A stretch of DNA of 57,847 bases, counting the filler, from Dugesia japonica (taxonomy: Eukaryota), in NCBI GenBank assembly GCA_001938525.1. It is 5 parts of 5 records of this genome, joined end to end, with 100 filler letters (N's around TTAATTAATTAA, not from the genome) between each part and the next. Parts side by side here need not be neighbours in the genome. Positions count along the whole stretch, not along the records: positions 13,758 to 24,587 come from MQRL01614308.1; 4 more parts are not named here. The stretch is one strand, 5' to 3'. The position numbers and the translations under genes are program-made. Each line of letters opens with the position of its first letter. Position 1 is the stretch's first letter. The notes below the pieces were generated by a model. It was not told where the DNA came from. It ran no database searches and saw only the letters and a list, made by a program, of their open reading frames with translations. This document shows, piece after piece, positions 13,758-24,587 of the stretch.

Positions 13758-13987
13758 ATATTATATTAATTATAATGAAAATTTTTGGAATAAATTAATT
13801 AATTTTATTCGGGAAAAAGATCTTAATTACAAGAAAATCGGTTAAAAGGGAATATCTTTGCTCAGTTATATCGGAGGAGGCCCGGGAAAGAAAATTCAAA
13901 AAGGAAACAACTCGGGGGAATTGCTTTTCATAACAGGAAGGTGTCACATCTATCAGAAAGGTCTGAAGAAAGGGGGTAAAGAACGAG

Positions 13988-14205
13988 CCAATGAGGGGCC
14001 ATGAAATAAACAGAAGATAAAGCCCAAAAAATCAGCAGGTTCTCTACAAATAGCCACCAATGTAAGAATAGAAAATCAGAAAAAAATCTTAAACGTTAGA
14101 AGCATTACCAATAAAATGTAAGAACCGAAAAACAAAAATAGCAGGCCAATGGTATGGAAGTTGGGGTGTATAAAAAATTGTGTTAAAACCCTTCTGATTT
14201 TAGTA
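13988..14205 (+). promoter_or_regulatory. Cassette promoter copy 1 (CCAAT x4, MEF2-like x2, degenerate TATA)
   Basis: CCAAT at 13988, 14057, 14108 and 14146. CTACAAATAG at 14044 and ACAAAAATAG at 14132. TGTTAAAA at 14181 sits in the TATA position, with TATAAA at 14168. Confidence 0.65.
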
Positions 14206-15247
14206 TAAAACATACGAAAAAAATTATACCACAAAATCGAACAATAACCTAAAAGTTTTAGTACTAACTGCGATATACGGTATATTATAATCAGAAGGAA
14301 ACAAAATAAAAAATTACTGGTAAGAAGAAAATTTGGATTTTTAAACAGTAACGGAAATTACCTTAGTAACAGCAGTGTTAACGGAGAAAAATTTCCAGGA
14401 GTTATCAGACAAGAGTTCAATATTCATACTTTGTGCAAAGCCGTTGCAGAAATCCCGAAGCTAATACAAAGTAAATTTTTGTTGTTATTAATCTCATGTT
14501 AAATAGAATTCAGTTATATAATAAATTATTAATATTTTGAATCCGATTTCTGATTGTTAGTTCATTATGTGTTTTTTAAATAGTGTAAAAGAAAAGAAAA
14601 ATAACACGATAAAACTTTGAATAAATTTTATTAACAAGCCAGCAATTGAATTTTGTATATTTCGACAGAAAATTTGTATTTCCACATCACAGCTTGTAAA
14701 TTATGGATGATCAATTTTTGCCGACTTAAATTCATTAGCGAGAGACATCAAGTAGTAAAATTTCCATTGATCCAGATGCCTACTGAGGAGTGATTAAAAA
14801 TCCAAGATTTAGTATGAATCATTCGATATTTTCTGCTAGTAGAAAATAAATAAAAAATTTGTAATTAAGGCAATGGAGTTATCTGACTAAATACCAGTCT
14901 TGATCATTTGAGCTGAGTAAGATGACTAAATCATAGTCTGTTTAATCATATTGATGTTTATTATCTAATTCTTGCGACCAGTCAGTGAAAATTTCCAATG
15001 TGTGCAAAAAGCATTTAAGAAGTTAAATATATAATCAACCATGTAAGACATTCTAACTCATCCTTCTTTGCCCATTGATGATTACCTTAACGGAAATAAA
15101 GGTTGACAGTATTATTTTCTTTTGATTTACCATACACTACAGAGTGGCTGAGGCTTGATGACATAAACGCAGGATTGTTTAAAAAATAATGAATCTGGCA
15201 TTATCAAATAAATTGAAAAGTTTCGTTGGATTATTTATTATTTTTAT

Positions 15248-15656
15248 TACACGGTTTCCGCGCAATATTGTTTTTTTTACCTGCAGGATGACTAGAATTT
15301 GCCCGTTTATATGAATATTATTAAATTTATTATTATTAATCTTGATACTACAGTGATTATTATTAGTATGATTATTGCTATTATTATTATTTTAATCATT
15401 ATTATTATCATTGCTATTGTTGAAGTGNNNNNNNNNNNNNNNNNNNNNNNNNNNNNNNNNNNNNNNNNNNNNNNNNNTACACGGTTTCCGCGCAATATTA
15501 ATTTTTTACCTGCAGGATGACTAGAATTTGCCCGTTTATATGAATATTATTAAAGTTATTATTATTAATCTTGATACTACATTGATTATTATTAGTATGA
15601 TTATTGCTATTATTATTATTTTAATCATTATTATTATCATTGCTATTGTTGAAGTG
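15248..15656. repeat. ~180-bp duplication flanking a 50-N gap (probably uncollapsed alleles)
   Basis: 15248-15427 and 15478-15656 are near-identical and sit directly on either side of the gap. Confidence 0.85.
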
Positions 15657-16118
15657 AAACAACCAGTTTAAGAAGAAAAACAAGGCCAAGGGCCCAAAGC
15701 GTAAAGAAGGAGATTGGGAAAAGAAACAAAATAAGATAATTATCGATGACGAGAAAAAATTACAATAATTACACTGATAAGAAAAAACCGAGGAAAACGG
15801 TAAATGGTGAAAGAAAACATCAAGTGGGTAAAATCGTGGTTGAAATCAAATTATTAATTAGTTGAATTATAATTATTAAAAAGAAAAAAAATGGTTAAGA
15901 AAATAATAATTAATTAATAAAGGAAAATTAATTAATTTTATCAAAAAATGAAATAAAATTACTCAAAAATCTGTTTTTTACAGATAACTTCACTCAGGAA
16001 AGTCACAGAAACCTGGTTTAAGAAAATCTGAAAAGAAAATGATCAGAGGTAATAGAATTTTGCAAGAAGAAAATATTATCAATATCAGGAGAACCCTTAC
16101 AAAAGTTTGAAGGATAAG

Positions 16119-16340
16119 CCAATAAGGAACCAGAAAAAGAAAATAAAACAAAGAACAGAAGATCACATGGTGACATAAAAATAGCCATTTAATGGAAACT
16201 CTAAAATTCTCTGAAAAAATCTGAAAACTGGCACCATCGCCAATCAGAAGCGAGAAATTTGAATTAAAAATAGAAATCCAGTGGCGATGATGCCTAGTTG
16301 CATTGGCAAATCATATATAAACCCCCAAGTTTTAGATGTA
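16119..16340 (+). promoter_or_regulatory. Cassette promoter copy 2
   Basis: CCAAT 16119, TTAAT 16189, CCAAT 16240, CCAGT 16278. ATAAAAATAG 16175, TTAAAAATAG 16264. TATATAAA 16314. Confidence 0.7.
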
Positions 16341-16691
16341 TTCACCCCAAAAAAATTGAGTTTTAACAAGTGTCACAGTATTTGACTATTTTCATCACGC
16401 GAATCTATTGGAGGATAACTCAACTAGTTTGGAATAAGTAGTTAAAAACGAAGAGACGCATGTCTAGTAATCAGTGGAAAATTAGCAGAGTAAAATATTA
16501 TATATTCATCGAAATTAACTTTAATCTAAAGAAAAAACAAGAGAAGAAATCGATTACCCATTCTAATCTGCATCACCACGGTTATTCAGAAAACCCGTTG
16601 CAGAATTGAAATTAATAAATTCAAATTGTAAACAGTGTTTTGCTAAATTTATTTGTGTTTATATATTTATTAGAAATATATTAGTTTAAAT

Positions 16692-17954
16692 ATGGTTAAT
16701 TTTATATCTCTAAATTTTAATTTGGTTTATTGGGATTTTAATTGACTGAAAACTTGTCATTAGTGATACAATTAAGTGCATTTCAAATTACGGAAATTTC
16801 ATCGCTTCAGATTCACATGCCACCTATAAGAGTAGGATCAATCGTGTTTGCTATAACCAACTCACCACTTTGCATACCTAGAATCATTATTTCCAACGCC
16901 AGCCACATGAGTGTGCAGTTATGATATGAATTTTTTAACACACATATGCAACAGCGAAATAGAGAATTAAGAATATGTGTGTATAACTACGACGATCACT
17001 CTTCATTGATGAGTCAGAAAATCGAATTTTTGCAGTAATTATTCTCAAATGATATTTATAGATAGACTGTAACTTAAGCTAAATGCATTTAATCCAATGA
17101 CTATTTTGTTTAATAAGTGGGAGTTTTCAATGATTCTTCTTCCACGTTTTATTTCCACCAAGTCTATCTAACCTCTGCTATGTTGAAAATGATTGGATTT
17201 CTTACATTTTTGCATCCATGCCAAAACCTCATTTTGTTGATTACTTCGTTTGAAGATTAAACTCAACTTATGGTTCCGTAATATCACTGCATCCTAACTC
17301 CATGAAGAATTCAAATGACCGCCTGCTTGCTACATTACCTCCTGATATATGCAAACTTGGTTAGAGGAAGTGTTAGCATAATAACCAATCTCTACCTGGA
17401 TTTGCGATGTGGAGTTTTGGAGAATAGTAGTCAAAGATATTAAAACTAATCTGACATTCCTGTTATTACCCAAATTACATTAGACTATCCGCAAATATTG
17501 TTATCACCTTTCCCCAGCGTCAGATTTCGCCATGGGTCCCCGAGGACATTCATTGCTATTTGTAATAATATTGTGCAATTGTTGATAACCATTATGTAAA
17601 AATTTAGATTTGTCATTGACACCCTTTGCCTATAATTCTCCTCATAATCATTTTATTAAGAAATTACTGTGTTATTTGTTCGATAATTATTAATATATGT
17701 ATTATGATGCGATCTCATTATCAACAGTATTATTGTTCTCAATGTTAACTCTAATATTGCTTTCATAATTACTAGTACAATTTTTAATGATAATTGGAAA
17801 TAATGGTACCCAGCCTGAAAAGAAAGCCAAGCGAAGAGCCAAAAGGAAAGAATTAACAAAGAAAAGGATTAAAAGGAAAGTCAATCAAGAACAAAGCACC
17901 TATGATGAAAAAGAGATAGTATATACAGCAATCGCAAGGAATTTGTTTGAATAA
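16692..17954 (+). pseudogene. Possible degenerate membrane-protein gene (body of cassette 2)
   Basis: Frame-hopping translation gives a hydrophobic N-terminus (LIWFIGILID*KLVIS), a Cys-containing middle, a hydrophobic stretch (STVLLFSMLTLILLS*LLVQFLMII) and a basic tail KKAKRRAKRKELTKKRIKRK...EIVYTAI. There are many stops. Confidence 0.3.
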
Positions 17955-18390
17955 CCAGTATGGCTAAATTAGAATAAAATTAATTAATAAATAAAAGATT
18001 AAAAATACCGAGAGGGTGGATAAAAAGATCTTGGATGGATAAATCGAAACCACATCGATAATGGTGCCCAAAAGAAATCTTGAGAATAATAATAAAAATC
18101 AAGAAATAATTACGAGTGAAAAACCGTGAATTACCAAAATTTTGTTTGGGTTCCACCTGAGGTGGGTGAAGGAAACGTGGCTGGGGAAAAAACAGCCCTC
18201 AGAGGACCCTTTCAAGAATTTAACCTAACGCCCCTAAGTTAGACATTCAGCATATAGCGGTTGACCTCTCACTCCATGGGAAGTCCACACCTATACACCT
18301 TTAGATTTGGATTCATGATTTTCCCTATTATTCGGATTTCATTAAATACTAGGATGAGTCAAACAATGAAGACTTTATTTTACCAAAAAA

Positions 18391-18771
18391 TTACATCAGA
18401 TCTAATGCACTCGGGTCTAACCACTTGGCCGGATCCGTTGTTAAAAAATTGAACAATGCAGAATCATCGTTGTCGTCCCATTGGACATAAGTGGGGTTAC
18501 TGAACTGTTGTGAGAGGTCCGAGATATACTGCTTCAGGAAATCAATTTTCCGCTGTAAGAGCAATCTCGTTTCCTCTTCCAGAGCTTTGGTTTGTATTGC
18601 TAACTCACTCTGCTTCTTAACCACGAGATCTAGTTTCTTTATTAACTCGTTCGTCTGATCGAGATGCCTAAGAGCCCGGTCGGCCTTTTGCTTAAGATGC
18701 TTCTCAATCAAAAGACGGCGCAGAATTTGATGACATCGACGCAAATTGTTGGGAAAGGCGATTCGAGGCAC
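18391..18771 (-). CDS. Orphan ORF, predicted coiled-coil, 126 aa
   Basis: Open frame with raised GC in AT-rich surroundings and a heptad-like LIKKLDLVVKKQSELAIQTKALEEETRLLL. Starts at GTG or continues from an upstream exon. Confidence 0.45.
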   Translation of the reverse strand: MPRIAFPNNLRRCHQILRRLLIEKHLKQKADRALRHLDQTNELIKKLDLVVKKQSELAIQTKALEEETRLLLQRKIDFLKQYISDLSQQFSNPTYVQWDDNDDSALFNFLTTDPAKWLDPSALDLM

Positions 18772-18884
18772 TAAAAGAAATTAAATTAGTAACCAAGTAA
18801 TTTAACAAAAGTGGTAAAGCACTACAACAATAATCGAATTCACGAGAATGATTAAAGAATATATTTATTTAAGAAAACGTGGGT

Positions 18885-19315
18885 TATCATGTTCGCGAGG
18901 TTTGAGTACTTTTCTCGATCATCAACGGCTCAAGAGGTATCTTCTATTTGAGACTCAATACATCCCCAACCAGTTTATTCTCTCAGTCATGGCTGGACCG
19001 GATAATTTCTGCGAATGACTTCACTTGTTTTTTCTATTCACGTTCTTGTGTATGGGAGGCTTCGGCCTCCTTTTTGTACACTATACACATTTTCTTGTAC
19101 CGAAGCACTTTACTATTCGCAGTGGCTATCTCCGCCTCCCAGCGGCGCTTTGCAAGACGATAGAGGTCCCAAGTTATCTCTTGGTCCTCACTGGTTTCTC
19201 TCATCTTTTTGGTGGGAGCTGAAGAACGGTTCAGAGAGGAATGCACTGCAAAGTAGAAAATATTTACTAAAGGTTTCATCATTAAAATTACTGAGGTACT
19301 CGAAACTCTTTCCAT
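18885..19315 (-). pseudogene. Orphan coiled-coil ORF with internal stops
   Basis: ORF 19034-19315 continues through stops as KKQVKSFAEIIRSSHD*ENKLVGDVLSLK*KIPLEPLMIEKSTQT. Confidence 0.4.
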
Positions 19316-19451
19316 TACTGTAACCGAAAAAAAATAATCTTAATAATATCAAAGAAATTTTCCTTTATTAAAATAATGAAAAGAGGTAAGTCGATTATTA
19401 CTAAGTAAAGACACATATTTATTTATAATTCAAAACGATAAAACCAAGGGC

Positions 19452-19706
19452 TCATTGTGAGTTAGCAGTTGAATCAGTAGTAGGATCGGTATTTTCAGCA
19501 TCTGCAACACCAGAGGGTTCCCTAACACCCCAGAGCAAATTCGTGATAAAGGCCTGCATGACTGGGGGTGGAGCCTGAGGTTGGTAATTAAAAGGAGTGG
19601 TGTGATTATGCACGGGTCCACTCCACTGCTGAAAATTCACCCTCTCGCCAAAGCTCTGAATGCGAGCTACTGTGGCATCAACGGGAGGCAAATACGATCG
19701 ATCCAC
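19452..19706 (-). CDS. Orphan Pro/Thr-rich ORF, 84 aa
   Basis: Open frame with coding-like GC, bounded by AT-rich spacers, same strand as the two ORFs downstream. Confidence 0.35.
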   Translation of the reverse strand: MDRSYLPPVDATVARIQSFGERVNFQQWSGPVHNHTTPFNYQPQAPPPVMQAFITNLLWGVREPSGVADAENTDPTTDSTANSQ

Positions 19707-19899
19707 TAAGATGTCCGCATCTTGATTATGAGGGTTATGGTGAAATAATATTCCTTGAAAAATAATATTCCTTTTAATATACAGAGTTTATTTTTATTAA
19801 TTTATACCAAAATTAACAACTACTTTCTAAATATATAGTAGTTTGAAAAAAAAATTAAATCACATTCAAAATAAACTGAATCAAATCAAAATAAAATTA

Positions 19900-20005
19900 A
19901 TAAACAATATCAGCATCAATTAGAGTCAAATAAACAATATCAGCATCAATTAGAGTCAAATAAACAATTAGGTTCAAATGAACAATTAGAGTCAAATAAA
20001 CAATG
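19900..20005. repeat. 30-bp tandem repeat with shorter derivatives
   Basis: ataaacaatatcagcatcaattagagtcaa occurs twice, followed by aacaattag(ag/gt)tcaaat partial copies. Confidence 0.85.
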
Positions 20006-22239
20006 AATGTTTGGGGATCTGTTCGAAGTTGGGTGCTGAATTGGATTGAATTTGCACTGTCCTGACTGATTTTGGATTGACTTTGAAGATAGCTTGATTT
20101 NTGTGATGTTATTGTGGTGTTATGTTTGCATGCTATGTTTTTTGTCTGCGTGTTGTGCATGCTGTGTACTCTGTACCCCAACAAAACAATAGTTAACAAT
20201 TTTACAACTGGAGGTAAAACACATCTATTATATTTAATTCAATTAATTGAGAACCAAAAATCAAATATGGTAGTCAGTCTCCCTCGTCCAATTCAACTAC
20301 CCCAGGTAACGGGAATAGTTCCGCGAAGCACTGGAGATCCGATTCGTCTGGCGACAGAACGAGATTGGGAAAGAGTAGGTGACCGATTAATTGTTTCCTA
20401 TGGGCTCTTTCCCGTTCTTGTCGCAACCACAGGAGGGTTCTCGTTAGAATATCACCCATAGAAAATCTATCCCTTAATTAACATATTGATAAAGTAGATT
20501 CAAAAGGATTTTTGTGATTCGTATATGAAGGTACGGAAAACATTCGTTTTGCCTTACTCGGCTTCTAAATATAATATTGTCTGAAAAAGAAGTATCCCAA
20601 GGACCCTTGCTAATTCGGTATGTCCACCAATAACACGAATTTATAATAGCAGTAAACGTGATAAACTCTGGGATGATAATACTCGTCATGGTACGGTCGA
20701 TACTCATTATGAGATACTCTAAAATTCTTTAAACGTGCAGTAATTCCATAATTTATGTTATTGGCGATGTCGGAGGTAGTGGATAGACCTACAGTGACTG
20801 TAACCGCAATGTTTTGCCATGATAGAATAACCGAATTATTTGTAAATAACCATTACGCAAAATTAATTTTTTTATAATAAAAGATTAATCATTACGCCGA
20901 TGGTAACTGCCCTAATAACATCAATAAAATAACAAAAAAATATTTTATTAATTGTAATAATGATATCAATCACAAAATTTAAATTTAATAAATGTTACAC
21001 TCGATGAAGATCTTACCGCTAGCTTGGGCGATAACAGCTTTAGTTGGCTGTCAAAGGATCTGTAACCTTGTCAACCGTCCCCAACTCATTAAGGAAATCA
21101 CTTTTGCAAATCCCACCATGAGAATTATAATATTTCCATTTAAGTTACGAAAGCCTTGTCACCTAGGAGTTCCACTATGCCTGGACGTAGATAAAATATT
21201 ACCTTGTCGACTTTATTCACCTGGCTTCCCTATTGGATCTATGACTTAGACTATTTAGAGGTAAAAACAAAAATGATCCATCATGAATGAAGCATAACAT
21301 GTAATGCTTATGTCGCGGCGATGTACTGAGACGATTGAATATTCAATTTCTCGAAAAGAAATCCACTATTGTAACAGAGTTAGAATTGGATGAGACAGTT
21401 GCAGTATTTGTTGAGGGAATATTCATGACTTGCCCAACGAAAATGCAGTTTAGCTCAATATGGATAGTTTGCGTTCTGGCTTCAATATTCACACTTATGT
21501 GACTCATGTATCAATTATCGATTGGTAGATTATGCACACCNACTTCCGAGTGAGGTAATTATTAAGTCATTAATTGTAAATATAACGAGANTATATCATC
21601 AATTATCAAGTGTTGCGAGTTAATTCGTAGAAGNTAAACACAAAAAAAAAGATTTCTAAATTGCCTCAGCAAAATTGCACCCCTACTCATTTTACGATCT
21701 GGGTACAATTGTTGGATTCATTTACAGAAATCAAATTATAGAAGTCTTCAAAAATGTACTTTATAATTTATAGATTAACTGAAGATTTATAATTCCAATA
21801 CAAGCACAAAATGCCAATTTTAAGCAGATTTATTATTAGTGGTAGAAATTATAGTGATGACTACTTATAATTTTCAATGTAAATGCTTAAATAGAATCTT
21901 AAACATATTCACATTTAATGACATAAATTATTTGTATTGATGATTTATTATAATTTCAATCTAAGCACACAAATAAAATTTTAAACATTTATTATTAATA
22001 TCACAAATTATTATTACAATCATTTAATACAGCAACGACACTTACTATTAAAATAAGGATTTCTGCAACGGTTAATTCACCAAAATATAATTTAGTTCCA
22101 CCTGGGTGTATTGGTCCGATTCGATTCAATCTCTGTCGTTAATAAGTAGAATCTTTCTTCTCTGTAATTCAAATCGTGACACTAAGGAATTAATCGATTA
22201 GAAATGGTGATCTTACCGTGTAAAATATAGTATTAAATC

Positions 22240-22456
22240 ACCGAAATTCGGTTGCTTTTTATACGTTTTTCCAATGCAACCCGATTTTGTTTTTGTTGGT
22301 TGGCTATTTTTAATTTGATATAACCCATTTCTATTGGTGGTGGTGTCACTGTTCTGGAATTTTGCAGATTTTCTGTAATTCTGTTGGCAGCTATTTTTGG
22401 ATCATCAGGTGAGTTTTTGTTCTTTATCTTATTTTTTAATTCTAGGATACTATTGG
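22240..22456 (-). promoter_or_regulatory. Cassette promoter copy 3 (inverted)
   Basis: Minus-strand CCAAT 22456, CCAAC 22387, CCAAT 22337, CCAAC 22299. CCAAAAATAG 22400, TTAAAAATAG 22313. TATAAAAA 22263-22256. Confidence 0.7.
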
Positions 22457-23131
22457 ATCGATCTTAAAATCTTCGTGACGACCCTCTAGATGGCGGTATC
22501 ATTTTCTAGTGTCAAAAATCGGATAGCCCAATACAAATCCTTTACAGTTTTACTTATCTCTTAGTTCCAGGGTTACTTGGAGCATAGATATTGTTAAATA
22601 ACTGTTTTGTAACTAATTTTCATTTATTTTTCTTTTATAATTAATTGATATTTTCCAATAATTAATTGTTTTTTTACTGAGTATTTTCCTTTATTCTTCT
22701 TAATAATTTAGTAATTCCTTTTAATTATCATTTTTCTTGTTGCTCTTCAAATTGTTCCAACGGAATCTTCATTTTGCTGCTTCTTTCTTATTTTGATATT
22801 TTAGCAATTATCCACTTCAAATAAGATTTGTCGTAATTGATTCTGCTAGGACTATCTATCCTACTTGATTTCCTTTCTTCTTCTTCCTTCTCTATTATTA
22901 ACCTTGGTCCTTAATCATGTGTTTCACCCCAACAATTTTATTAATTAATTTTGCAATAAAATAAAGCAAAATTAGTTACAAAATCGTTTTATATGAATAA
23001 CTTGGCTCATAAGAATCGCAGCGACGCGTGGAAAGTAAATCTGAGAAGAAGGATGGATGAAGCATTAAGAGTTGAATATTAGAAAATCTTACCACCATCC
23101 AGAAGATTGCCACAGGGATTTGAAGATTGGG

Positions 23132-23350
23132 CCAATAAGAGCTCTGAAAATAAAAATAAAACAAAGGAATGACAATCACATGTCACTCCAAAAAAAGACG
23201 CCAATAGAAGTGCAAAAAATCTGTAAAAAATCTAAAAAATTGGCATCGGAACCAATAGAAAACTGAAAATTCAAACTAAAAATAGCGACACAATAACAAT
23301 AATATCGAGTTGTATTCAGAATGCTATAAAAGGCCCCCAAATCTTAGTAC
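23132..23350 (+). promoter_or_regulatory. Cassette promoter copy 4
   Basis: CCAAT 23132, 23201 and 23252; ACAAT 23290. Perfect MEF2 consensus CTAAAAATAG at 23276. TATAAAA at 23325, with TTAGT initiator-like motif about 18 nt later. Confidence 0.7.
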
Positions 23351-24587
23351 AAAAAACTACAAAAAAATCGCTAACAGATATAAAAAACTCGTTAATCAAA
23401 CCTATTCTAAGTGGAAAATAAATTCTTCTATCAGTTCAAGAAAATCGAATATCAGTTAAACTCAGTGGTATATAAGACTACTCCAGATATTTTTAACAGG
23501 TGCCGGCAACGAATTAATTAGTGTTAGCAATTATCTCGAATTAATTTCTAATTTTCAGTAGAGACATGAATACCAGTCATTACATTTTTCACTCAACTAG
23601 CTATGACGGTTAGAATATAGACACAATAATACAACTGGCAATCAGTTATTAAGCCAAGTTTACAATGGCGTGGAGCAAGATATACATCGTCTGCCTAACT
23701 ATTGCTAATCACACACACCAACACATGATTTCATATAGTAAGTTTGTACGTTGTGTGTATAGGCACAGCAAAAATAAGAGTCGATTAGTCGGTAAACTAA
23801 TATTTCATTGCCGCAGTAATGATTAACAAGTTTCCATGTTATTCCTCTCGATACACACACATCATCCATTATTCAAAATAAATTTACCCTTTTATCTGTT
23901 GTTTTCGTCATTTGAGTGACACCGGAGATAATTGTAAATCGATACGCGAAATTTTTCTTTCTTGCATATGGCATACAACAACTAGATAGATTAGACATAA
24001 CATAACAGCTAACCAAATGGTGAGTCTGTACTTAATAGACAGGTGAGTTAGTGAGTCACCTAGTGATTTTTGATTATTAACTAATATATCTTAGTTATTC
24101 GCTCATATCCAATCTGCTGTCATTGAGATATATTATGGCCAGTTTCTAATGAATCTAGGATCTATGGTTGTTCAGGAAATATTCCACATCGGAGCGTGTN
24201 CACAGATGTCTAATCCCTCTTATTATGTCAATTTGAGCTGGTTAATATTCTTCTGTGTCTTCNCACGGTCGAACTGACTATCGATTAATAATGAAGATTT
24301 GCTCACCATTTCTTCTTACATGTTACGAATTTACACGTCCAATATGCGCTTGGGATGCTGGTATGATATAAATGAGGAGTAGGATTTGTGCAGGTAACCC
24401 AAATAACCGAATTGATTTTGGAATCCCGTTGTTGTGTTTACTTTTTCCAATATTAATTATGTTTCTGCCAAAGCAAAAGGAAATTTATAATTTCTTCTTT
24501 ATGTTAGATTTTACCCTAGATGGGTTTATTTCTTATATTATTAAATCTAGGGGCGTCGAACTTTATATGAAATTAAGTCTAGGGTAA

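What the first reader, a model, noticed from the sequence alone, without database searches (positions are those of the whole stretch)
13758..24587. Four ~2-kb cassettes share a rigidly spaced CCAAT/MEF2/TATA promoter in front of divergent cargo
Seen: four copies (13988+, 16119+, 22456-, 23132+) whose bodies are hard to align, yet the four CCAAT positions keep spacings of 69/51/38, 70/51/38, 69/50/38 and 69/51/38 bp. A (Y)TAAAAATAG-type site lies 13-14 bp before boxes 2 and 4 in every copy, and the TATA position is 35-36 bp after box 4. Each promoter is followed by an AT-rich leader, a ~0.7-0.9-kb GC-richer body and an ATT-rich tail 1.1-1.3 kb after TATA. Established: CCAAT binds NF-Y, YTA(W)4TAR is the MEF2 site, and fixed spacing suggests cooperative binding. 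Inference: this is a standardised expression module, amplified in tandem and inverted, driving a fast-evolving gene or ncRNA family, probably as cargo of a large mobile element. A promoter more conserved than its gene body is the reverse of the usual paralogue pattern.
Basis: partly seen in the sequence, partly recalled or inferred. Interest (0 to 1): 0.85.

Follow-up and report, generated by a model that had tools for sequence, protein, structure and literature searches.

The report
Repeated promoter module before divergent bodies
Four old copies of a roughly 2-kb unit in an unidentified AT-rich eukaryote keep a promoter-like module and an AUG-free leader while the rest has diverged beyond alignment, a real but previously described pattern for fast-evolving clustered genes.

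Summary
The four copies are real. A 430-480 bp module (13761-14238 +, 15891-16370 +, 22683-22230 -, 22936-23380 +) is homologous at 60-68% identity, z = 18-51 against shuffles. Landmark spacing holds within 1 bp.

- Only boxes 1 and 3 are CCAAT in all four copies, 11 of 16 positions overall.
- AAAAATAG is present at 6 of 8 sites.
- The strict MEF2 consensus fits 3 of 8 and is unspecific in this DNA.
- The TATA offset holds in 3 of 4 copies.

New support for a promoter reading:
- Sequence after the TATA is AUG-depleted on the sense strand only (1 ATG against about 10-16 expected).
- In three copies an 11-mer, found nowhere else in the piece, lies just before a GTAA splice donor.

The bodies share no DNA or peptide similarity and show no long ORF, codon periodicity, stable hairpin or Rfam match.

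The gap is flanked by a 180-bp near-identical duplicate, probably an uncollapsed contig overlap.

No relatives turned up in viral, metagenome or prokaryote collections or in protein databases, and the organism is unknown. Nothing supports mobile-element cargo.

Best reading: tandem and inverted paralogous Pol II genes. The closest precedent is the gall-midge SSSGP clusters. Interest is moderate to low.

The parts
13761..14238 (+). Module copy 1. Its upstream part is cut by the left edge of the piece. CCAAT at 13988, 14057, 14108, 14146; AAAAATAG at 14134; TATAAAA at 14169.
   Evidence: nhmmer profile E 2e-115; motif positions
14200..14470 (+). Copy 1 AUG-free leader (putative 5' exon). It ends at a GTAAAT donor (14471), 20 nt after the 11-mer CCGTTGCAGAA (14441).
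   Evidence: the TSS position is inferred from the TATA
14471..15306 (+). Copy 1 body. It has no ORF, codon periodicity, or similarity to the other bodies.
15248..15656 (+). Copy 1 (ATT)n tail, present twice around the assembly gap 15428-15477. The 180-bp duplicate (97% identical) coincides with the contig ends, so it is a probable uncollapsed overlap.
15657..15890 (+). Purine-rich (65%) and AATTAATT stretch between unit 1 and module 2. It holds an AATAAA.
15891..16370 (+). Module copy 2. CCAAT at 16119 and 16240; degenerate boxes at 16189 and 16278; AAAAATAG at 16177 and 16266; TATATAA at 16314.
16345..16627 (+). Copy 2 leader with one internal ATG. The 11-mer is at 16595 and the GTAAAC donor at 16628.
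16628..17955 (+). Copy 2 body, AT-rich tail (about 17650-17790) and purine-rich stretch (17800-17955). Only the tail and purine-rich part align with copy 1 (61% over 200 bp).
22230..22683 (-). Module copy 3. CCAAT at 22456 and 22337; degenerate boxes at 22387 and 22299; AAAAATAG at 22398 and 22311; TATAAAA at 22263.
22046..22232 (-). Copy 3 AUG-free leader. The 11-mer is at 22071-22061 and the GTAAGT donor at 22045.
20900..22045 (-). Copy 3 body and T-rich tail (20915-20995). The start of the first intron is homologous to copies 1 and 2; the rest is unalignable.
22684..22935 (-). Purine-rich stretch upstream of copy 3. It abuts the start of copy 4 at the inversion junction, and a small palindrome lies at 22931-22988.
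22936..23380 (+). Module copy 4. CCAAT at 23132, 23201, 23252; ACAAT at 23290; CTAAAAATAG at 23276; TATAAAA at 23325.
23356..24587 (+). Copy 4 downstream part. It is AUG-free to 23565, lacks the conserved 11-mer, and its body runs to the edge of the piece.

Best explanation
The piece holds a small family of paralogous RNA polymerase II transcription units, each about 1.9-2.1 kb. Two lie in tandem and two head-to-head, and they arose by old local duplication and one inversion.

Each unit starts with a promoter of about 330-480 bp kept under purifying selection:
- two invariant CCAAT pentamers 120 +/- 1 bp apart, the obligatory core of an NF-Y site;
- two weaker CCAAT-like positions;
- an invariant AAAAATAG octamer 5 bp before the last box, whose binding factor is unknown;
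- a TATA box.

Transcription is inferred to start about 30 bp after the TATA. It runs through a 190-325 nt leader that avoids AUG and, in three copies, ends at a conserved splice donor.

What lies downstream has diverged beyond recognition. AUG avoidance in the leader argues that the RNAs are, or recently were, translated. I therefore favour short or micro-exon-encoded, fast-evolving peptides over pure non-coding RNA.

Shown: homology, motif invariance, constant spacing, AUG depletion, the conserved donor, and the absence of detectable coding in the bodies.
Inferred: transcription, the start site, the factors, and translation.
For: - Homology of the four modules.
- The only invariant runs of 5 or more columns are the two CCAAT boxes and AAAAATAG. 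Motif columns are invariant in 25/36 cases against 82/284 for spacer columns.
- AAAAATAG occurs 6 times in 10.8 kb, always at the two module positions.
- Box 1 to AAAAATAG measures 153-155 bp in all copies, while the leader length varies 192-281 nt.
- There is no codon periodicity in the module, with invariant shares by phase of 0.35/0.29/0.34.
- The leaders hold 1 ATG in 950 nt, against 9.9 expected under Markov-1 and 16.5 under shuffling. The other permutations of A, T and G occur 6-25 times. The modules upstream are far less depleted, at 24 against 32 expected.
- CCGTTGCAGAA occurs 3 times in the piece, each 16-23 nt before a GTAA donor and colinear in copies 1-3.
- Units are colinear (module, leader end and intron start, tail), with no sharp repeat boundaries.
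- Published precedent for the pattern: PMC2955719.
Against: - No transcript data are available.
- No ORF, shared peptide or 3-base periodicity was found in any body, so a product is not demonstrated.
- Copy 4 lacks the conserved leader end.
- Only four copies are available, and the motif columns were chosen after seeing the data, so the Fisher P value is inflated.
- No homologous module was found anywhere else, so the constraint cannot be checked on independent copies.
- CCAAT and TATA strings are common in AT-rich DNA: 40 CCAAT on both strands of the piece.
Confidence: 0.55

Rival explanations
1. The units are a tandem family of spliced long non-coding RNA genes. Selection acts on the promoter and first splice site, and the RNA body is free to drift. 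This resembles the aphid Ya family.
For: - The bodies show no ORF, periodicity, shared peptide, hairpin or Rfam family.
- The array is compact with promoter-sized spacers.
- The Ya genes are tandem, have three exons, give RNAs of about 380 nt and lie less than 1 kb apart (PMC7293609).
Against: - Sense-strand AUG depletion of the leaders is expected for translated mRNAs, not for lncRNAs.
- Ya transcripts are 85-99% identical to each other, whereas here the transcribed parts are the least conserved.
- No Ya sequence was available to compare.
Confidence: 0.2
2. The modules are alternative promoters, each with a non-coding first exon that splices to shared coding exons further away. This is the arrangement of clustered variable first exons in protocadherin and UGT1 loci.
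For: - The leaders are AUG-free and end in a conserved donor.
- Copy 3 points towards minus-strand exons that do show codon periodicity, at 19455-19787 and 18394-18771.
- The ATG at 19315 follows a candidate splice acceptor by two bases.
Against: - Copies 1, 2 and 4 point the other way, and no plus-strand coding exon was seen.
- Copies 3 and 4 diverge from each other.
- The minus-strand genes have their own TATA-like sequence.
- No constant exons were identified.
Confidence: 0.1
3. The module is a fragment of an old interspersed repeat (solo LTR, Helitron or MITE end, or retroposon 5' region). Under this reading the 'cassettes' are unrelated flanks.
For: - Identity among copies is low and fairly uniform, at 60-68%.
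- An enhancer-like internal repeat is weakly detectable.
- An (ATT)n and A-rich stretch lies at the unit ends.
Against: - There are no sharp boundaries, and homology fades into the purine-rich region and resumes at the leader end and tail.
- No terminal inverted repeats, primer-binding-site-like start or target duplications were seen.
- No TE protein domains were found.
- Neutral decay to 60-68% identity would not keep spacing within 1 bp, nor single out the CCAAT columns.
- There is no match in viral contigs.
Confidence: 0.1
4. The similarity is a compositional accident of A-rich DNA.
For: The modules are 44-47% A, which inflates identity and BLAST E-values.
Against: - Alignment scores are 18-51 SD above composition-matched shuffles.
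- The 22-base spaced pattern hits all four copies and none of 100 shuffles.
Confidence: 0.01

Closest known systems
Hessian fly (gall midge) SSSGP gene clusters, e.g. SSSGP-1 (PMC2955719)
   Same: - Units of about 2 kb, arranged as tandem repeats plus one inverted repeat.
- Promoter, 5' UTR and intron conserved, while the middle of the gene cannot be aligned.
- Small intergenic spacers.
- One SSSGP family has about 35 introns in 950 nt of coding sequence, so ORFs are invisible in genomic DNA.
   Different: - SSSGP conserved parts score about 80-98% similarity, against 60-68% identity here.
- SSSGP genes have a short 5' UTR (about 58 nt) and a clear signal-peptide exon.
- Here the leader is 190-325 nt, and no signal-peptide exon is shared. 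Only copy 4 offers a speculative one.
- The organism is unknown, and no SSSGP sequence was available to compare.
Aphid Ya long non-coding RNA family (PMC7293609)
   Same: An AT-rich insect genome, tandem arrays, spliced short transcripts with at most a tiny ORF, and less than 1 kb between copies.
   Different: - Ya transcripts themselves are conserved (85-99%, with a shared 148-bp block).
- Here conservation lies upstream of the TATA, and the leaders avoid AUG.
Multi-CCAAT NF-Y promoters (PMC4889920; PMC1802594)
   Same: Arrays of CCAAT boxes close to the start site, with the intact pentamer required. Arrays of four CCAAT boxes are documented.
   Different: - Preferred CCAAT-CCAAT distances in human NF-Y-bound sites are 24-27, 36 and 43 bp.
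- Here the invariant pair is 120 bp apart, and the 38-bp partner is degenerate in three copies.
- Binding is untested, and the taxon is unknown.
Clustered variable first exons with their own conserved promoter element (protocadherin and UGT1 loci; from my own knowledge)
   Same: A tandem array of promoter plus first exon plus conserved splice donor.
   Different: In those loci the first exons are long and coding, and all share one orientation with common constant exons. Here the orientations are mixed and no constant exons were identified.

Membership tests
NF-Y-type multi-CCAAT promoter | Intact CCAAT pentamer at each proposed site | tested here: inconclusive
   Boxes 1 and 3 are intact in 4/4 copies, box 2 in 2/4 and box 4 in 1/4.
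NF-Y-type multi-CCAAT promoter | Boxes lie within about 250 bp upstream of a start site, in a fixed arrangement | tested here: met
   The boxes lie about 25-180 bp upstream of the TATA. Spacing is constant to within 1 bp. The start site itself is inferred.
NF-Y-type multi-CCAAT promoter | Occupancy by NF-Y | not testable with these tools
   No binding data are available, and the organism is unidentified.
MEF2 (MADS) site | YTA(A/T)4TAR consensus at each proposed site, and specificity of that match | tested here: not met
   The strict consensus is met at 3 of 8 sites. It also matches 13 other places in the piece, mostly simple AT-rich sequence. The conserved core is AAAAATAG.
Solo LTR / LTR retroelement | Sharp termini, flanking target duplication, a primer-binding site after the repeat and a short polypurine tract before it | tested here: not met
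   Homology fades gradually and resumes downstream. No such termini are seen. The purine-rich stretch is about 250 bp, not a short tract.
Helitron / MITE / Pack-type element with captured cargo | Conserved defined ends (TIRs or a 3' hairpin) bounding variable cargo | tested here: not met
   The module sits at one end of each unit only. No terminal inverted repeats or end hairpins were found. The tail similarity is microsatellite sequence.
Large mobile element (Polinton or gypsy) carrying the cassettes | Element proteins (integrase, polymerase, RT, capsid) in the neighbourhood | tested here: not met
   26 ORF queries against Pfam gave no such domain. Only 10.8 kb is visible.
SSSGP-like fast-evolving secreted-protein cluster | Tandem and inverted cluster with conserved promoter, UTR and intron and an unalignable middle | tested here: met
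   compared with PMC2955719.
SSSGP-like fast-evolving secreted-protein cluster | Shared signal-peptide exon and an ORF for a small secreted protein | tested here: inconclusive
   There is no shared peptide. Only copy 4 gives a speculative 45-aa model, which has no homologue.
Aphid Ya lncRNA family | Transcribed region conserved among copies (85-99%, with a shared 148-bp block) | tested here: not met
   Among the copies here, the transcribed parts are the least conserved. Direct comparison with Ya sequence was not possible.

The most novel reading that the evidence does not exclude
The module is a self-contained, spacing-locked promoter unit that has been repeatedly placed in front of unrelated sequences. 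It would then be a 'portable promoter' that recruits new transcripts, rather than the conserved part of diverged paralogues. The bodies would be truly non-homologous cargo.
Probability: 0.08. Interest if true: 0.7.

Novelty: new member of a known kind. Interest (0 to 1): 0.35.

Why it matters
If transcription is confirmed, the locus would be a clean natural example of promoter architecture held under selection. Two CCAAT pentamers, one octamer and their spacing are kept while everything transcribed turns over. That makes it useful for reading promoter grammar in a non-model AT-rich eukaryote, and as a marker for a fast-evolving clustered gene family. Families of this kind in other animals often encode secreted, host-interaction or reproductive peptides. 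As it stands, it is one small cluster in an unidentified genome, and the pattern has published precedents.

Tried and rejected
- Coding in the module: no 3-base periodicity of conservation. Antisense ORFs are compositional, because the T-rich strand lacks stop codons.
- Alternative genetic codes: no coherent long ORFs appear under any.
- Shared peptides among the bodies: none.
- 'Transmembrane segment plus basic tail' reading of the (ATT)n and purine-rich stretch: it is a microsatellite, with no consistent frame and no similarity between the two small basic ORFs.
- pri-miRNA-like hairpins: none in the bodies.
- Rfam and tRNA: only one sub-threshold snoRNA hit, on the wrong strand.
- Conserved RNA structure at the leader end: none.
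- A fifth copy after unit 2: only an AATTAATT-rich vestige, not significant.
- Spaced-pattern scans of viral, metagenome and prokaryote-genome contigs: 13 loci, and BLAST of the 11 viral and metagenome loci showed no homology to the module; the 2 bacterial-MAG loci were not compared.
- Protein searches with three ORFs and one exhaustive HMMER search: no homologue.
- Exact-product look-ups: none on record.
- Literature k-mer search: nothing.
- Identifying the organism: failed. The piece has GC 32% and CpG o/e 0.87, so it is not vertebrate-like.
- The two-exon model of the central minus-strand gene was searched exon by exon. The joined product was not searched.
Full report
SCOPE AND CONTEXT
I worked only on 13758-24587. 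The piece has 32% G+C and a CpG observed/expected ratio of 0.87. It has no tRNA genes, no Rfam family above threshold and no ORF longer than 129 codons. It looks like intergenic or gene-poor DNA of an AT-rich, weakly methylated eukaryote. I could not identify the organism.

THE ASSEMBLY GAP (tested first)
- The 180 bases left of the gap (15248-15427) and the 179 bases right of it (15478-15656) are 97% identical. They differ by a few substitutions and one 1-bp indel.
- The duplicate begins and ends exactly at the two contig ends.
- The simplest reading is that two overlapping contig ends were not merged. The gap is then spurious, and unit 1 is about 230 bp shorter than drawn.
- A true 230-bp tandem duplication cannot be excluded.
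- The sequence there is a decayed (ATT)n microsatellite, and no credible frame crosses the gap. I did not fill it.

THE OBSERVATION
A self-comparison finds four homologous stretches of 416-486 bp at 60-66% identity. A profile built from them recovers exactly four copies:

| Copy | Coordinates | Strand |
|---|---|---|
| 1 | 13761-14238 | + |
| 2 | 15891-16370 | + |
| 3 | 22683-22230 | - |
| 4 | 22936-23380 | + |

There is no fifth copy. The modules are 44-47% A, so I checked the scores against composition-matched shuffles. They lie 18-51 SD above them. Copies 3 and 4, the head-to-head pair, and copies 2 and 4 are the closest pairs (67-68%). Copy 1 is the most divergent.

In the four-way alignment one third of columns are invariant. 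The only invariant runs of five or more columns are CCAAT (box 1), CCAAT (box 3) and AAAAATAG just before box 4. Motif columns are invariant in 25 of 36 cases, against 82 of 284 for spacers. The P value of 3e-6 is inflated, because the columns were picked after seeing the data.

AAAAATAG occurs six times in the whole piece on both strands. All six lie at the two module positions.

Spacing is tight. Box 1 to the end of AAAAATAG measures 154, 155, 153 and 154 bp. In the same copies the distance from the TATA to a conserved leader element is 272, 281 and 192 bp. Indels therefore did accumulate next door but not in the module.

Conservation shows no 3-base periodicity, so the module is not coding.

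- Box 2 is CCAAT only in copies 1 and 4, and box 4 only in copy 1. That makes 11 of 16 positions.
- The strict MEF2 consensus is met at three of the eight sites. It also matches 13 other places in this piece, mostly simple AT-rich sequence. It has no discriminating power here, and the conserved element is better described simply as AAAAATAG.
- The TATA lies 35-36 bp after box 4 in copies 2-4. In copy 1 it lies 23 bp after box 4, and the aligned position has decayed.

WHAT LIES DOWNSTREAM
Strong homology stops 35-50 bp after the TATA, which is where a start site would be expected.

1. The next 190-325 nt are almost free of ATG on the sense strand.
   - There is 1 ATG in 950 nt, against 9.9 expected from dinucleotide frequencies and 16.5 from shuffles.
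   - The other five permutations of A, T and G occur 6-25 times.
   - The modules upstream are much less depleted, at 24 against 32 expected.
   - This is the signature of a 5' untranslated region. It fixes the strand and the approximate start, and it suggests the RNAs are translated.
2. Copies 1-3 share a colinear island at the end of this leader.
   - The 11-mer CCGTTGCAGAA occurs three times in the piece and nowhere else.
   - It is followed 16-23 nt later by GTAAAT, GTAAAC or GTAAGT.
   - Homology then continues into the first 100 nt or so of the putative intron.
   - Copy 4 lacks this island.
3. The unit ends are colinear too, in the order (ATT)n, a purine-rich stretch of about 250 bp, then an AATTAATT-rich stretch with AATAAA. 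This holds at 61% over 200 bp between units 1 and 2.

Between these islands, from about +600 to +1300 after box 1, the bodies show none of the following:
- DNA similarity;
- shared peptides in any frame;
- an ORF beyond chance length;
- codon periodicity;
- a stable hairpin.

The units are therefore whole-length paralogues with very uneven constraint. They are not a short repeat dropped into unrelated DNA.

WHAT IT MOST LIKELY IS
The best reading is a local family of Pol II transcription units. Its promoter and first exon-intron junction are maintained, while the remainder evolves freely or very fast.

The CCAAT pentamers point to NF-Y. NF-Y needs all five bases, and multi-CCAAT arrays are a known promoter type (PMC4889920; PMC1802594). 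However, the invariant pair here is 120 bp apart, not at the 24-43 bp distances typical of human NF-Y pairs, and binding is untested. The partner for AAAAATAG is unknown.

Because the leaders avoid AUG, I favour mRNAs for short or micro-exon-encoded peptides over lncRNAs.

One speculative model exists in copy 4, using exons 23665-23737 and 23817-23881 with a GTAAGT donor. It gives 45 residues with a hydrophobic N-terminus, and its stop codon overlaps an AATAAA. It has no homologue and no counterpart in the other copies.

RIVALS
- lncRNA family. This fits the lack of coding but not the AUG depletion.
- Alternative first exons feeding distant exons. This is possible for copy 3, which points at minus-strand exons with real codon periodicity. 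The mixed orientations argue against it.
- Old transposable element or solo LTR. The evidence against it is the gradual boundaries, the colinear downstream islands, the absence of terminal structures or TE domains, and the spacing constraint.
- Compositional accident. This is excluded.

COMPARISON WITH WHAT IS KNOWN
The pattern of a conserved promoter, UTR and intron with an unalignable middle, in units of about 2 kb arranged as tandem repeats plus one inverted repeat, is described almost word for word for the Hessian fly SSSGP-1 cluster (PMC2955719). One SSSGP family has about 35 introns in 950 nt of coding sequence, which shows how a real gene can lack visible ORFs. The differences here are lower identity, long AUG-free leaders and no shared signal-peptide exon.

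Aphid Ya lncRNA arrays (PMC7293609) resemble this locus in layout, but they are conserved in the transcript rather than upstream of it.

I therefore file this as a new member of a known kind, not a new principle. Nothing supports the 'cargo of a large mobile element' idea within the 10.8 kb visible.

SEARCHES ELSEWHERE
- A 22-base spaced pattern that hits all four copies and no shuffle found nothing in viral contigs, 7 loci in metagenome contigs and 2 in prokaryote-genome contigs. A looser 18-base pattern found 4 loci in viral contigs, and a stricter pattern found none in metagenome contigs.
- None of the 11 viral and metagenome loci is homologous to the module. The two prokaryote hits are bacterial MAG contigs that I did not compare.
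- The central minus-strand ORFs have no homologues. I searched the 126-residue exon and the 111-codon exon by word index, ran the 126-residue exon against 1.84 billion representatives, and made two exact-product look-ups.
- I searched the two-exon model of that gene exon by exon. The joined product was not searched.

While weighing the LTR and primer-binding-site, surface-antigen and chemoreceptor ideas, I recalled a few short motif strings from memory in my reasoning. That included primer-binding-site starts of retroelements. None was entered into a tool, and none is used as evidence here.

VERDICT
The promoter interpretation is partly supported and is strengthened by the AUG-free leaders and the conserved donor. 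The MEF2 and mobile-element parts are unsupported. Interest is 0.35.

Noticed in passing
window 18394-19315 (-): A probable two-exon gene. The exon with an ATG at 19315 ends at a GTGAAT donor (19041). It joins in frame to 18771-18394, which is preceded by a TTTTAG acceptor and followed by a stop and AATAAA. The 3' exon shows clear codon periodicity. The predicted product is a coiled-coil-like protein of about 220 residues. There is no Pfam domain and no homologue of the 126-residue exon in 1.84 billion representatives.
   Followed up: partly
window 19455-19787 (-): A 111-codon open frame with strong codon periodicity, ending in a stop plus AATAAA but lacking a start codon near its 5' end. It is probably the last exon of another orphan gene. 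No homologue was found.
   Followed up: partly
window 24372-24587 (+): An ORF cut off by the edge of the piece gives a sub-threshold Pfam match to the N-terminus of the nematode Srg chemoreceptor family (E 0.035, 14 bits against a cutoff of 22). After 26 queries this is within chance, and hydrophobic AT-rich-encoded peptides often give such hits. It is the only hint about taxon.
   Followed up: partly
window 23665-23881 (+): A speculative small gene in copy 4. An ATG in a good context is followed by a hydrophobic N-terminus and a GTAAGT donor at 23738. The acceptor is at 23816, and the stop at 23879 overlaps an AATAAA. The product would be 45 residues. The two upstream ATGs (23566, 23603) could lie in an intron (23503-23654).
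   Followed up: partly
window 19899-20004: Perfect 30-bp tandem repeat (2.3 copies), overlapping an 18-bp repeat (3.2 copies), in the AT-rich spacer between the central ORFs.
   Followed up: no
window 22931-22988: A small imperfect palindrome (75% over 59 bp) exactly at the junction where the upstream region of copy 3 meets the start of copy 4. It may mark the inversion breakpoint.
   Followed up: no
window 16297-16321 and 22256-22280: Copies 2 and 3 share an extra inverted CCAAT (TTGCATTGG) between box 4 and the TATA. It is absent from copies 1 and 4.
   Followed up: no
window 18122-18159 vs 22067-22104: A 38-nt match (71%) between the region after unit 2 and the antisense of the end of the copy 3 leader. 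It is not significant, and I could not tell whether it is a vestige of another unit.
   Followed up: partly
window 20101, 21541, 21592, 21634, 24201, 24263: Single unread bases (N) scattered inside the sequence, besides the 50-N gap. They are typical of a low-coverage draft assembly and were left as they are.
   Followed up: no
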